Source: Macrostomum hystrix
Lineage: Eukaryota; Animalia; Platyhelminthes
NCBI GenBank assembly: GCA_950097015.1
Contig: CATNEN010000003.1
Coordinates: 14,632,001 to 14,696,000, forward strand
DNA: 64,000 bases
Direction: 5' to 3'
Below, piece after piece: positions 23,300 to 36,418 of this stretch; position 1 is the first letter of the stretch; the number at the start of each line of letters is the position of its first letter. The notes below the pieces were generated by a model. It worked only from the letters and a program-made list of their open reading frames with translations. It was not told the DNA's origin and did not search any database. The position numbers and the translations under genes are program-made.

Positions 23300-23390
23300 C
23301 GGCTAAAGCGTTTGTCTCTCGCACCGAGCTTCCCGAGTTCTGCTCTGGGGCGAGGCTAAATTCAGCTTTTTCTGTACATATCGGCTCATA
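23300..23390 (+). mobile_element. tRNA-derived SINE family 2 fragment
   Basis: GGCTAAAGCGTTTGTCTCTCGCACCGAG...GGGCGAGGCTAAATTCAG...TACATATCGG; homologous to 23536-23641 and 27164-27292. Confidence 0.7.
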
Positions 23391-23535: not shown

Positions 23536-23641
23536 TCTAAGAAATCGTTATCTAAAACTTCTTGGGGGCTGTCTCTTGTACCGAGGTTTCCGAGTTCGAA
23601 TCCAGGGCGAGGCTAAATTCAACCTTTTCAATACATATCGG
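23536..23641 (+). mobile_element. tRNA-derived SINE family 2 fragment
   Basis: B box GAGTTCGAATCC followed by GGGCGAGGCTAAATTCAACCTTTTCAATACATATCGG. Confidence 0.7.
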
Positions 23642-25451: not shown

Positions 25452-25555
25452 AGAGAGAGAGGGAGAGAGGGAGAGGGAGGGAGATAGTGAGAGAGGGAGA
25501 GAGGGAGAGAGGGAGAGAGGGAGAGAGGGAGAGAGAGCGGGAGAGAGGAGAGAGG
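25452..25555. repeat. GA-rich polypurine microsatellite
   Basis: (GAGAGAGG)n-like tract. Confidence 0.9.
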
Positions 25556-25611
25556 ACACTGCCCATTGAATTTCAAAAATCTAATGTTGGAATCGATTCC
25601 GATATGTATCG

Positions 25612-25721
25612 AAAAAATTGAAATCAGGATTCGAACCAAGGCAACTCCAGACGCGTTTCGCTCTTTCTGGAGCTCATCAGTAAAGTCTAGCCTAGCGCTT
25701 TAGCCATTAGGCTATTGGCGC
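25612..25721 (-). ncRNA. Pol III-type tRNA-like unit containing a type I hammerhead ribozyme
   Basis: A box TAGCCTAATGG (25714-25704); GACTTTA-CTGATGA-GCTC(CAGAAA)GAGC-GAAAC-GC-GTC-TGGAGTT (25687-25643); B box GGTTCGAATCC (25637-25627); T6 terminator (25617-25612). Confidence 0.85.
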
Positions 25722-25839
25722 TTGTTCAAATCCAGCTTTCAATCTCAAAAAATCGTAATCGATTCGGCAGCACCCCGCAACTCAATCCATACTCACTTAA
25801 GTCCGTGGTACTGACTCGTACGAGACGCCGGTGCTGGCA

Positions 25840-26565
25840 TGAGAGAGAGGGAGAGAGGGAGAGGGAGGGAGAGAGTGAGAGAGGGAGAGAGTGAGAGAGG
25901 GAGAGAGGGAGAGAGGGAGAGAGGGAGAGACGGAGAAAGGGAGAGACGGAGAGAGTGAGAGAGGGAGAGAGTGAGAGAGGGAGAGAGTGAGAGAGGGAGA
26001 GAGTGAGAGAGGGAGAGAGTGAGAGAGTGAGAGAGGGAGAGAGGGAGAGAGGGAGAGAGTGAGAGAGGGAGAGAGCGAGAGAGGGAGAGAGGGAGAGAGC
26101 GAGAGAGGGAGAGAGGGAGAGAGCGAGAGAGGGAGAGAGGGAGAGAGCGAGAGAGCGAGAGAGGGAGAGAGGGAGAGAGCGAGAGAGGGAGAGAGGGAGA
26201 GAGGGAGAGAGGGAGAGAGGGAGAGAGCGAGAGAGGGAGAGAGGGAGAGAGCGAGAGAGGGAGAGAGGGAGAGAGCGAGAGAGGGAGAGAGGGAGAGAGC
26301 GAGAGAGGGAGAGAGGGAGAGAGGGAGAGAGGGAGAGAGCGAGAGAGGGAGAGAGTGAGAGAGGGAGAAAGGGAGAGAGGGAGAGAGGGAGAGGGAGAGA
26401 GGGAGAGAGGGAGAAAGGGAGAGACGGAGAGAGGGAGAGGGAGGGAGGGAGTGAGAGAGGGAGAGAGGGAGAGAGGGAGAGAGGGAGGGAGGGAGAGAGT
26501 GAGAGTTGGAGAGAGTGAGAGAGGGAGAAAGGGAGAGTGGGAGAGAGGGAGAGGGAGAGTAGAGA
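25840..26565. repeat. GA-rich 8-bp microsatellite (GAGAGAGG)n
   Basis: Polypurine tract read directly. Confidence 0.95.
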
Positions 26566-27163: not shown

Positions 27164-27292
27164 TTCTAAGAAATCGTTATCTAATACTGCTTGGGGAGAC
27201 GAGTGGCAGTCTCTCGCACCGAGGTTCCCGAGCTCGAATCCGGGGCTCTGGGGCGAGGCTAGATTAAACTATTTCTATACATATCGGCTCAT
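27164..27292 (+). mobile_element. tRNA-derived SINE family 2 fragment
   Basis: TCTAAGAAATCGTTATCTAA...GTCTCTCGCACCGAGGTTCCCGAGCTCGAATCC...ATACATATCGGCTCAT; homologous to the two 23.3-23.6 kb copies. Confidence 0.7.
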
Positions 27293-28436
27293 GAAAAAAA
27301 TGACATCAGAGAAACTTATCTGGAATACGCTCGTTGTATTCATTAAATGAAATTTAAGCTCGTATGTTGCTTAAAAAATTATATATCTGCATGCGTATTT
27401 CTAGGAATCGATGTCACCTAGTTACAACTATTTCTACACATATAGGCTAACTAATAAAATAAGCGAAACTTCTATAAAAAACAAAAAATCTTTGCACATT
27501 GAGGAACCTAATCCTATTCTAAAGGACGAGCAAAATTATTTTCCTTTCTATAGGAATCGACCCGCATTTCGATTTTATGCTCGGCTTACCAACGATATTA
27601 AACAAAAAAGCTAAGATCGCTTCAACGAATGGGAGTGAAAAATATCCTAAAGTTTCCATTTTCTGTTCACATCGGCTAAACCGATAAAATATCGATAAAA
27701 GAGCGAAAGAAAATATTTGTTTGCGAAAGCAAAGTGTCCTCAATTTCTATAAATTTACATACTTTACTTTAGTTAAAACTCTTTCTGAACTTTTGGGTTA
27801 ATCAACAAAACTCAGCAAGAAAGTCGAAGGAAAAAAAGACAACTTCTTTCTACTTTTTTATCTTCTCTCGGGAGAACATAAATTAGATCAGACAGGCCAT
27901 CTTGAGATGCAGCCCTTACGCCTTTGGTACTCTTTTGTCAATCAATCAATCAAATTATCGGAGATATAGACGCAGATTCGAACTTACGTCGAAAAGAAGA
28001 AGACTAAATTTTTCAAGCACTCTTCAGCACGCCTGGAAAGTTCTGTTCCTAATTTAGTTCCGTGTCCTGGATCGCTGTTATGGCGTTGATAACTAACTAG
28101 ATTACTTACTGAGCCTAGCGTGTCTTCAAACGAACCTATCTGTTGCATCTAATTCAACACGGCTCATGAAAGTCTGCTTCTCGAGCATGCTCTCTCAATC
28201 GTAGAGTTTCGAAATTGTTCGTAAGAAAATTTGATTAGTCAACTCTTGCTAGCAATCCATAGTTGAATTAAAAGGCGGACAAGCTGAGAGGTAAGTTGAA
28301 ACGCATCTGTTTCTTGCTCAAGAAAATATACTCGTTAGACAAATAGAAAAAGAAATTTTAACTCAAAAATATTTATTTCCACACAAGTGTTGGGGGTTTT
28401 GATATTCGAAAAGGTTGGGAGATAAGCGTGGGAGAG

Positions 28437-36216: not shown

Positions 36217-36418
36217 TCTGAATTGGTTTAAAGATTTAAGAGGGATATCCAGATTTCAAATATTCTAAACAGAATCAGAGCGTTGTTTAATCTTTTCGAT
36301 ACATATAGGCCAACTTAAGTTTTTCGATACATATCGTCAGTTTTATAAAAACTGTGTCGCAAAGGTTTATTCAAAGCACTAAAAGAGTACATTAAATGGC
36401 CTCAGCCATCCAGTGAAA

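What the first reader, a model, noticed from the sequence alone, without database searches (positions are those of the whole stretch)
25569..25766. Hammerhead ribozyme replacing the anticodon arm of a tRNA-like Pol III unit
Seen (minus strand): GCGCCAA-TAGCCTAATGG-CTAAAGCGCTAGGCTA-GACTTTA-CTGATGA-GCTC-CAGAAA-GAGC-GAAAC-GC-GTC^TGGAGTT-GCCTT-GGTTCGAATCC-TGATTTCAA-TTTTTT. All hammerhead core nucleotides are intact (CUGAUGA, GAAA, GUC cleavage triplet, predicted cut between 25650 and 25649). Stem II is 4 bp and stem I is 7 bp (3 G-U). The ribozyme sits between the A and B boxes and is followed by a T6 terminator. The head (GGCTAAAGCG) and tail (TTTTC.ATACATATCGG) match the local SINE family 2, whose other copies have an ordinary anticodon arm here. 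Imperfect direct repeats ending AATCGATTC (25569-25601, 25741-25766) flank it at ~170 bp spacing. Established: minimal type I hammerheads with a palindromic stem III (ACGCGT) occur in Penelope-like elements and retrozymes and cleave as dimers; Schistosoma SM-alpha has a hammerhead downstream of a tRNA head, not inside it. Inference: a self-promoted ~110-nt RNA that cleaves into a 72-nt 5' piece and a ~35-nt 3' piece, i.e. a SINE/retrozyme chimera. A competing 7-bp helix CUCCAGA/UCUGGAG would sequester the cleavage site and could act as a conformational switch. I cannot confirm novelty without a search.
Basis: partly seen in the sequence, partly recalled or inferred. Interest (0 to 1): 0.92.

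Follow-up and report, generated by a model that had tools for sequence, protein, structure and literature searches.

The report
Hammerhead ribozyme repeat, one decayed copy
This is one old, mutated copy of a roughly 336-bp protein-less jumping repeat of a Macrostomum flatworm that carries a self-cutting hammerhead RNA motif between two tRNA-gene-like promoter boxes; repeats of this general kind are known, the placement between the boxes appears undescribed, and the scan has already met this family several times.

Summary
The hammerhead motif is at the stated coordinates and the predicted cut site (25650/25649) is correct. It is not a stand-alone 110-nt gene. It is the core of one copy of a young dispersed repeat with at least 75 intact ribozyme copies. 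The unit is a 291-bp core plus a CT-rich linker of about 48 bp. Copies share a fixed 3' end, vary in 5' truncation, often form partial tandems, and lie in (CTCTCTCC)n arrays. These are the marks of Penelope-type, retrozyme-like retroelements.

Stem III is the loop-less palindrome ACGCGU, so cutting needs two ribozymes.

New evidence: the 5' ends of truncated copies pile up at the scissile bond (4 loci) and 6 nt upstream (4 loci). This fits cDNA made on cleaved RNA.

The tRNA reading is only partly supported:
- The A- and B-box motifs are real, but no cloverleaf is detected.
- The B box pairs inside a long hairpin.
- The "T6 terminator/SINE tail" is a 17-nt motif found 872 times genome-wide.
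- Similarity to "SINE family 2" is no better than shuffles.

The window copy is the most decayed of 29, and its "switch" helix is private to it. No RNA data were available. The scan found this family before on other DNA (e.g. s1-316725, s1-084958).

The parts
25841..26553 (-). Upstream (CTCTCTCC)n array, about 89 units, into or beside which the copy sits
   Evidence: TRF 25843-26553, period 8; sequence read
25554..25840 (-). Core of one repeat unit (287 nt here, 291 in the consensus). This is a full-length solo copy and the most diverged of 29 full copies: 17 differences including a 4-nt deletion, against a median of 1.7%.
25455..25553 (-). Downstream CT-rich linker of the unit, continuing into a short (CTCTCTCC)n array. 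This is the constant 3' end of all copies.
   Evidence: TRF 25455-25555; the fixed linker is seen in 16 of 27 full copies between a partial and a full unit
25643..25687 (-). Minimal type I hammerhead. Stem I is 25687-25681/25649-25643; CUGAUGA 25680-25674; stem II plus loop 25673-25660; GAAA 25659-25656; palindromic stem III ACGCGU 25656-25651; C17 at 25650; predicted cut between 25650 and 25649.
   Evidence: Core intact in all 30 aligned copies apart from scattered private changes.
25704..25714 (-). A-box-like word TAGCCTAATGG, inside a small hairpin (GCGCC...GCGC, 25721-25695)
25627..25637 (-). Perfect B-box word GGTTCGAATCC. In the predicted RNA fold it pairs with GGATTTGAAC at about 25733-25724.
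25599..25617 (-). T6 run fused to the genome-wide 17-nt motif TTTTCGATACATATCGG
25722..25771 (-).
   Evidence: Fold of the window copy z -4.66; consensus-like unit z -4.36
25558..25640 (-). 3' arm of the same hairpin (holds the B box, the 17-nt motif and the second 'AATCGATT' repeat)

Best explanation
Window 25455-26553 (minus strand) holds one solo, decayed copy of a young, ORF-less retroelement family of a Macrostomum flatworm. The unit is about 336 nt: a 291-nt core plus a CT-rich linker of about 48 nt.

Shown:
- The family is copied through RNA in the sense of the ribozyme, because copies have a fixed 3' end and variable 5' truncation.
- More than half of the full copies are preceded, across the same linker, by a 5'-truncated unit. 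This partial tandem is typical of Penelope-like elements and retrozymes.
- Copies sit in (CTCTCTCC)n-type arrays.
- The unit RNA is predicted to fold into a long, very stable hairpin with the hammerhead at its tip.

Inferred:
- Long transcripts that span two units bring two hammerheads together through the palindromic ACGCGU stem III.
- Each ribozyme cuts after GUC.
- The 336-nt product, carrying a 5'-OH and a 2',3'-cyclic phosphate, is probably circularised by an RtcB-type ligase.
- That RNA, or the uncut multimer, is reverse-transcribed from the CT-rich linker annealed to a nicked CT array, by the enzyme of an autonomous Penelope-like element.

The pile-up of copy 5' ends at the scissile bond is a fossil trace of such cutting. 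The tRNA-type A and B boxes are real words that flank the ribozyme, but there is no evidence here that they drive the RNA that is copied. This particular copy has a single ribozyme and two private changes that favour a misfold, so it is probably inert.
For: Family and copy number:
- 40 of 130 candidates scored at 94-100% identity over 221 nt.
- 69-77 intact ribozyme patterns against 0-2 in the control.

Unit and architecture:
- Of 48 distinct copies in hand, 46 end at core position 291; 29 of these start at positions 1-6 and 17 are 5'-truncated at scattered points.
- 16 of 27 full copies have an upstream partial unit. In 12 of them the spacing to the full unit could be measured; the modal spacing was 48 nt.
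- CT arrays lie on both sides.

Fold: z -4.36 for the unit, -4.85 for the central 135 nt, -4.66 for the window copy.

Ribozyme:
- HH9 32.8 bits, E 1.6e-6. Hammerhead_1 31.4 bits on the AAAAA-loop copies.
- Loop 2 is the only hypervariable spot: 5.8% against 1.4%, p 2e-5.
- The consensus minimum-energy fold contains stems I and II.

Trace of cutting:
- Four independent loci begin at the scissile bond (C7:893378, C1:21164041, C26:655771, C38:31509122 = L009).
- Four begin at C15.2, 6 nt upstream.
- A control 31-nt window further 3' has one CT-joined junction.

Penelope-like elements are present in this genome. L091-L093 encode YVDD...GIY-YIG, are 94-96% alike and 5'-truncated, with an inverted partial copy in L092. 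They carry a CUGAAGA-type minimal hammerhead with the same GAAACGCGUC stem III about 200 nt after the stop codon.

Literature:
- partial tandems, microsatellite bias and hammerheads in Penelope-like elements (PMC8557442, PMC4209133)
- dimeric minimal hammerheads (PMC5785218 as cited in PMC6765202)
- metazoan retrozymes of 170-400 nt, including in platyhelminths (PMC7229834)
- retrozymes as derivatives of Penelope-like elements (bioRxiv 10.64898/2026.07.22.740005)
Against: - No RNA evidence. The runs found hold the repeat only as contigs of unknown library type.
- Both Rfam scores are below their gathering thresholds.
- The family is too young (about 1.4% from consensus) for conservation or covariation tests. 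The catalytic core is not significantly less variable than the rest (5 changes in 639 cells against 98 in 7079, p 0.24), and no compensatory pair was seen.
- No sequence link to an autonomous partner beyond the 10-nt GAAACGCGTC and CT-rich DNA. The one Penelope-like family examined does not itself target CT arrays.
- Only about a tenth of loci carry two intact ribozymes.
- The 5'-end pile-up rests on 8 loci. Part of it could be microhomology between 'TC' and the CT array, and the class at C15.2 is not explained by cleavage.
Confidence: 0.72

Rival explanations
1. The A box, B box and T run form a working tRNA-type Pol III unit split by the ribozyme. It makes a self-promoted RNA of about 115 nt that cuts into pieces of about 75 and 35 nt, a SINE/retrozyme chimera. 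This could also hold as an added feature of the retroelement rather than instead of it.
For: - A perfect 11/11 B box and a good A-box word 66 nt apart, in the right order, with a T run 9 nt after the B box. All three are kept in the consensus.
- Two or three truncated copies begin at core positions 125-130, next to the tRNA-like position +1 at 124.
- There is precedent in the same phylum: Sm-alpha/Sj-alpha are ~335-bp, tRNA-Gln-derived, Pol III-type elements with a hammerhead after the promoter (PMC2770079, PMC6765202, PMC8490949).
- Pol III gene modules also occur in other non-autonomous retroelements (PMC10886601).
Against: - No cloverleaf and no Rfam tRNA hit. There is no acceptor stem for the stated head, and the T stem has 3 of 5 pairs.
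- The B box is predicted to pair with an upstream inverted copy of itself, and the antisense strand looks at least as tRNA-like.
- The T run belongs to a 17-nt motif present 872 times in unrelated places.
- The copied unit extends about 130 nt upstream of the A box and past the T run, so a Pol III transcript ending at the T run cannot be the template.
- There is no homology to 'SINE family 2'.
- A contig in run X4 carries a variant that lacks the 45 nt holding the A-box hairpin but keeps the ribozyme.
Confidence: 0.18
2. The hammerhead is a passenger. The repeat is mobilised like any short non-autonomous retroelement, and the ribozyme plays no part in making its template. The motif is intact only because the family is young.
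For: - The core is no better conserved than its flanks.
- Most loci have one ribozyme only.
- Craig et al. note that Penelope-like clades thrive without hammerheads, which may 'simply parasitize' them (PMC8557442).
Against: - 5' ends cluster at the scissile bond and stem III.
- Variation among subfamilies is concentrated in loop 2, while both stems and the core stay intact.
- The ribozyme sits at the tip of a strongly structured RNA.
Confidence: 0.12
3. It is a DNA-level foldback or MITE-like element: a long inverted repeat moved by a transposase, with the ribozyme-like word incidental.
For: The central ~215 bp is a long imperfect inverted repeat.
Against: - One-sided (5') truncation with a constant 3' end, and head-to-tail partial tandems with a fixed linker.
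- No terminal inverted repeats at the unit ends.
- The full catalytic core is on one strand only.
Confidence: 0.02

Closest known systems
Metazoan non-LTR retrozymes (Cervera & de la Pena 2020, PMC7229834), including newt/axolotl satellite-2-type repeats
   Same: - ORF-less unit of about 300 nt carrying a type I hammerhead.
- Stem II and loop 2 (GCUC-CAAUAA-GAGC) are almost those of the HH9/amphibian type.
- A short stem III needs a dimer, as in amphibian retrozymes.
- Highly self-paired RNA.
- Coexists with Penelope-like elements in the genome.
   Different: - Mostly dispersed 1.x-mers inside CT microsatellites rather than long tandem arrays.
- GC about 50%, against the under 45-50% reported.
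- tRNA-type A and B box words flank the ribozyme.
- No circular RNA has been shown here.
Penelope-like elements and their pseudo-LTR hammerheads (PMC4209133, PMC8557442, PMC11167929; dimeric minimal variants per Lunse et al. as cited in PMC6765202)
   Same: - Minimal hammerhead with a loop-less palindromic stem III.
- Partial tandems with a 5'-truncated upstream copy.
- Bias for insertion into microsatellites.
- An EN+ Penelope-like family in this genome has the same GAAACGCGUC.
   Different: - No RT/GIY-YIG ORF.
- Stem I is 7 bp, against 3 bp in the local Penelope-like element.
- No sequence homology to that element's 3' region beyond 10 nt.
Schistosoma Sm-alpha / Sj-alpha SINE-like hammerhead elements (Ferbeyre 1998, Laha 2000, as described in PMC2770079, PMC6765202, PMC8490949)
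   Same: - Flatworm host.
- Unit of about 335 bp.
- tRNA-type Pol III boxes plus a type I hammerhead with a 4-bp stem II and a 6-nt loop 2.
- Multimer-to-monomer processing has been proposed for them.
   Different: - In Sm-alpha the tRNA-Gln part is a recognisable tRNA (tRNAscan-SE calls it) and the ribozyme follows the promoter. Here the ribozyme lies between the two boxes and no tRNA fold is detectable.
- I could not read the primary paper or compare sequences.
Cassandra / Helenus / Ajax (TRIMs with 5S- or tRNA-like Pol III modules; PMC10886601)
   Same: A small-RNA-gene promoter module embedded in a non-autonomous retroelement that is not a SINE.
   Different: Those are LTR elements without ribozymes.

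Membership tests
Hammerhead ribozyme (type I, minimal/dimeric) | Conserved core CUGANGA ... GAAA and an NUH cleavage triplet in the right order | tested here: met
   kept in the family consensus
Hammerhead ribozyme (type I, minimal/dimeric) | Three helices around the core | tested here: inconclusive
   Stem I (7 bp) and stem II (4 bp) are present. Stem III is ACGCGU with no loop, so it can only form between two ribozymes. The cofold of two copies is more stable than two monomers (-37.8 against -32.0 kcal/mol) but does not single out that helix.
Hammerhead ribozyme (type I, minimal/dimeric) | Rfam gathering score | tested here: not met
   HH9 32.8 bits against 52; Hammerhead_1 31.4 bits against 34. 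These models expect a closed stem III.
Hammerhead ribozyme (type I, minimal/dimeric) | Self-cleavage | not testable with these tools
   Indirect only: 4 loci whose copies begin at the scissile bond
Non-LTR retrozyme | Short (150-450 bp) ORF-less repeats with a type I hammerhead in tandem | tested here: inconclusive
   The unit is 336 bp. It occurs mostly as a partial-plus-full unit, with few true dimers at spacings of 300-336, and not in long arrays.
Non-LTR retrozyme | Highly self-paired unit RNA | tested here: met
   z -4.36
Non-LTR retrozyme | Expressed as linear and circular RNA of unit length | not testable with these tools
   Only contigs of unknown library type were available
Penelope-like element (non-autonomous derivative) | Partial tandem with a 5'-truncated upstream copy, and microsatellite target bias | tested here: met
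   16 of 27 full copies; CT arrays on both sides
Penelope-like element (non-autonomous derivative) | Sequence shared with an autonomous RT + GIY-YIG element of the same genome | tested here: not met
   Only GAAACGCGTC and CT-rich DNA are shared with L091-L093.
tRNA-derived SINE / Sm-alpha-like Pol III element | A and B box words in tRNA order | tested here: met
   TAGCCTAATGG and GGTTCGAATCC, 66 nt apart
tRNA-derived SINE / Sm-alpha-like Pol III element | Recognisable tRNA-derived fold or homology | tested here: not met
   ARAGORN finds none at default or -ps; at ps80 it gives conflicting models. No Rfam tRNA hit. No significant similarity to the local tRNA-like SINE copies.
tRNA-derived SINE / Sm-alpha-like Pol III element | Element 5' end at the Pol III start, and no terminator inside the copied unit | tested here: not met
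   The unit starts about 130 nt before the A box. The T6-7 run lies about 65 nt before the end of the core.
tRNA-derived SINE / Sm-alpha-like Pol III element | Transcription by Pol III | not testable with these tools
   No RNA or ChIP data

The most novel reading that the evidence does not exclude
The two tRNA-type boxes are a working Pol III promoter split by the ribozyme. The resulting RNA of about 115 nt, ending at the T run, is not the transposition template. It is a diffusible 'half' of the dimeric hammerhead. Through the shared ACGCGU palindrome it pairs with long transcripts of solo copies, and possibly with Penelope-like element RNAs carrying the same stem III, and so allows them to be cut in trans.
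Probability: 0.1. Interest if true: 0.75.

Novelty: new variant of a known kind. Interest (0 to 1): 0.42.

Why it matters
Hammerhead-bearing repeats are thought to spread as self-cut, circularised RNAs copied by Penelope-like enzymes, but direct traces of cutting in genomes are scarce. This family is young, of modest size and from a laboratory-tractable flatworm genus. It shows copy 5' ends stacked at the scissile bond, which makes the model testable.

If the tRNA-type boxes around the ribozyme work, the family would link the Pol III-driven Sm-alpha elements of blood flukes with Penelope-type retrozymes. If they do not, this is an ordinary new member of a known class. This particular copy is a decayed one.

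Tried and rejected
- Rfam at gathering thresholds and ARAGORN on the whole window: nothing.
- Stand-alone small RNA gene: rejected, because homology among copies runs far beyond the A box and the T run.
- Flanking direct repeats as target duplications: rejected, because they are internal and conserved.
- 'SINE family 2' homology: rejected. The shared tail is a ubiquitous motif.
- A larger autonomous element attached to the unit: none found. Longer homology in L021 is microsatellite only. The C38 cluster is a segmental duplication with a 2279-bp period carrying five identical truncated copies.
- Other hammerhead families with CUGAUGA...CGAAAC...GUC: only this family.
- Selection test on the core against the flanks: no power, p 0.24.
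- A further census of 5' ends near the A box was impossible, because the 'own' searches were exhausted and the genome has no relatives in the collection.
- Ferbeyre 1998 is not held.
- A literature search for the 17-nt motif found nothing relevant.
- Papers on hammerhead ribozymes in Macrostomum: none.

Full report
**Observation.** Read on the minus strand, window 25687-25643 is a complete hammerhead core. Its parts are:
- stem I GACUUUA/UGGAGUU
- CUGAUGA
- stem II GCUC/GAGC with loop CAGAAA
- GAAA
- ACGCGU

An A-box-like word lies at 25714-25704. A perfect B box lies at 25637-25627 and T6 at 25617-25612. A sensitive Rfam scan gives Hammerhead_HH9 at 32.8 bits, E 1.6e-6, below the gathering score of 52. 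At curated thresholds nothing in the window passes, and ARAGORN finds no tRNA.

**It is a repeat, not a gene.** A 221-nt query returns 40 scored matches out of 130 candidates, at 94-100% identity over its full length, on many contigs. A strict ribozyme pattern finds 69-77 copies against 0-2 in reversed controls, all of this one family.

From 48 distinct copies I derived the following:
- The core is 291 bp, followed by a CT-rich linker of fixed sequence with a modal length of 48 nt. The unit is therefore about 336 bp.
- 46 of the 48 copies end at core position 291. Of these, 29 start at positions 1-6 and 17 are 5'-truncated at scattered points.
- 16 of 27 full copies are preceded, across the linker, by a 5'-truncated unit.
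- CT-rich microsatellites lie on both sides.

One-sided truncation in the sense of the ribozyme means that an RNA of that sense is the template. Partial tandems and microsatellite sites are the published hallmarks of Penelope-like elements (PMC8557442). Short ORF-less hammerhead repeats are the 'non-LTR retrozymes' (PMC7229834), now argued to be derivatives of Penelope-like elements (bioRxiv 10.64898/2026.07.22.740005).

Earlier notes of this scan name the host as a Macrostomum flatworm. I did not test that myself.

**The ribozyme.**
- Stem III is A15.1-U16.1, C-G, G-C with no loop. A single motif therefore cannot close it; two motifs can pair through the palindrome. This is the situation described for newt, amphibian retrozyme and Penelope-type minimal hammerheads (PMC6155905, PMC6765202).
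- Stem II and loop 2 are nearly the HH9 consensus.
- In the family consensus stem I has 5 Watson-Crick pairs and 2 G-U pairs, and the minimum-energy fold contains stems I and II.
- Loop 2 is the only hypervariable place (5.8% against 1.4%, p 2e-5) and it defines subfamilies: AAU, AAA, AAC.
- The catalytic positions are not significantly less variable than the rest (p 0.24). No compensatory change was seen.

**A trace of cutting.** Pattern searches anchored just 3' of the ribozyme show where truncated copies begin.
- Four independent loci start at the scissile bond. One of them (L009) is joined to unique DNA, so the junction is exact: TTAAT|TGGAGTT.
- Four more start at C15.2, six nucleotides upstream.
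- One starts elsewhere in that 31-nt window.
- A control window of the same size further 3' has a single CT-joined junction.

L009 has exactly the layout expected from a run-off cDNA on a two-unit RNA cut at its upstream ribozyme: positions 196-291, the linker, then a full unit.

The numbers are small. 'TC' microhomology with the CT array may help three of the junctions. The C15.2 class needs another cause, perhaps a polymerase stall at the three-way junction.

**The tRNA reading.** The box words are real, and a perfect B box is unlikely by chance in 291 bp. The case against a tRNA-like unit is as follows.
- ARAGORN finds no tRNA with introns allowed at default or relaxed thresholds. At 80% it returns two incompatible models. 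The cleaner one is on the antisense strand, with the antisense ribozyme as a 49-nt 'intron'. Rfam tRNA gives no hit at E<=10.
- The unit RNA folds into a long imperfect hairpin: z -4.36 for the unit, -4.85 for the central 135 nt, -4.66 for the window copy. In this fold the B box pairs with an upstream inverted near-copy, GGAUUUGAAC. The AATCGATT 'repeats' are further rungs of the same stem.
- The T run belongs to TTTTC[G/A/T]ATACATATCGG. This near-palindromic 17-mer has 872 genome hits against 0-1 in the control. Its flanks are unrelated, and it often occurs several times about 40 bp apart.
- Three local tRNA-like SINE copies also end in that motif. With the ribozyme and the motif removed, however, the module resembles them no more than shuffles do. 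The 10/10 'head' match depends on a minority G>A variant.
- The copied unit begins about 130 nt before the A box and continues past the T run. A Pol III transcript ending there cannot be the template.
- Two or three copies do begin at positions 125-130, next to the tRNA-like +1. I could not extend that census.

I therefore keep a working Pol III promoter as a rival or add-on at about 0.18.

**This copy.** It is a solo full-length unit between a 710-bp and a 100-bp CT array. It is the most diverged of 29 full copies, with 17 differences against a median of 1.7%. Two private changes, stem I C>U and loop 2 AU>GA, create the 7-bp CUCCAGA/UCUGGAG helix. Its minimum-energy fold (-15.9 kcal/mol) hides the cleavage site, and the ribozyme-competent fold scores only -7.3. 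In the consensus the competitor is 5 bp. The 'conformational switch' is therefore decay, not design.

**Penelope-like elements in the genome.** Four GIY-YIG loci were found. L091-L093 are 94-96% identical, 5'-truncated copies encoding ...YVDD...FLD...YRKPT...GIY-YIG. L092 has an inverted partial copy. About 200 nt after the stop codon they carry a minimal hammerhead, CUGAAGA-UGGCUA...UAGCC-GAAACGCGUC, with the same stem III palindrome. They share nothing else with the unit and do not sit in CT arrays, so the partner element remains unidentified.

**Expression.** No run on record as RNA holds the repeat. Four runs laid on 294 letters gave contigs only. One low-depth contig shows a variant lacking the 45 nt with the A-box hairpin.

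**Comparison and novelty.** The element works like a retrozyme or non-autonomous Penelope-like element, and in part resembles Sm-alpha. I found no paper on hammerhead ribozymes in Macrostomum, and none of the papers read describes a hammerhead lying between A and B boxes. The scan itself has met this family at least eight times on other DNA and reached the same main conclusion (s1-316725, s1-084958, s1-402474 and others). This report adds:
- the 5'-end pile-up at the ribozyme
- the true nature of the 'tail' and the T run
- the lack of homology to the local SINE copies
- the antisense and hairpin view of the boxes
- the decayed state of this copy

Noticed in passing
window 23368-23384, 23625-23641, 27271-27287, 36293-36309, 36321-36337 (+) and 25599-25615 (-); genome-wide: A near-palindromic 17-nt motif, TTTTC[G/A/T]ATACATATCGG. 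It occurs 872 times in the genome at up to 2 mismatches (control 0-1). Its flanks are unrelated, and it is often found in clusters of 2-5 about 40 bp apart, some in introns. It does not appear in the paper library. Its function is unknown; it could be a binding site or the end of a very small element.
   Followed up: partly
window 23313-23384, 23536-23641, 27165-27296 (+); L035-L056: An old tRNA-derived SINE-like family with the signature GAGTTCGAATCC.GGGCGAGGC (23 genome hits at up to 2 mismatches). The three local copies are 75-82% alike and end in the 17-nt motif. Most other copies continue into a different, longer body.
   Followed up: partly
L091:916-2090, L092:582-2089, L093:916-2082: A young EN+ Penelope-like family (YVDD...GIY-YIG). 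It has a CUGAAGA-type minimal hammerhead about 200 nt after the stop codon, which Rfam does not detect. The L091 copy sits inside an (AATCCACAGCAATCCAACAG)n minisatellite. L092 has an inverted partial copy.
   Followed up: partly
L090:1099-2022 and about 1990-2015: A fourth GIY-YIG ORF (307 aa), unrelated in DNA to L091-L093, is followed by two CCCTAA-like telomere-type repeats.
   Followed up: no
L087 (G000:C38:21521500-21531000): A segmental tandem duplication with a 2279-bp period carries five identical 5'-truncated hammerhead units, all starting at core position 112. These are duplications of one insertion, not five insertions.
   Followed up: partly
L014:1548-1594 (run X4 contig): A low-depth contig from another sample joins 1548 to 1594. 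This variant of the repeat lacks the 45 nt that hold the A-box-like hairpin but keeps the ribozyme.
   Followed up: no
G000:C25:6463218, C28:342969, C37:1918051, C38:26707997: Four independent truncated copies all begin at CGCGTC (C15.2 of the ribozyme), six nucleotides before the scissile bond. Cleavage does not explain this second 5'-end hot spot.
   Followed up: partly
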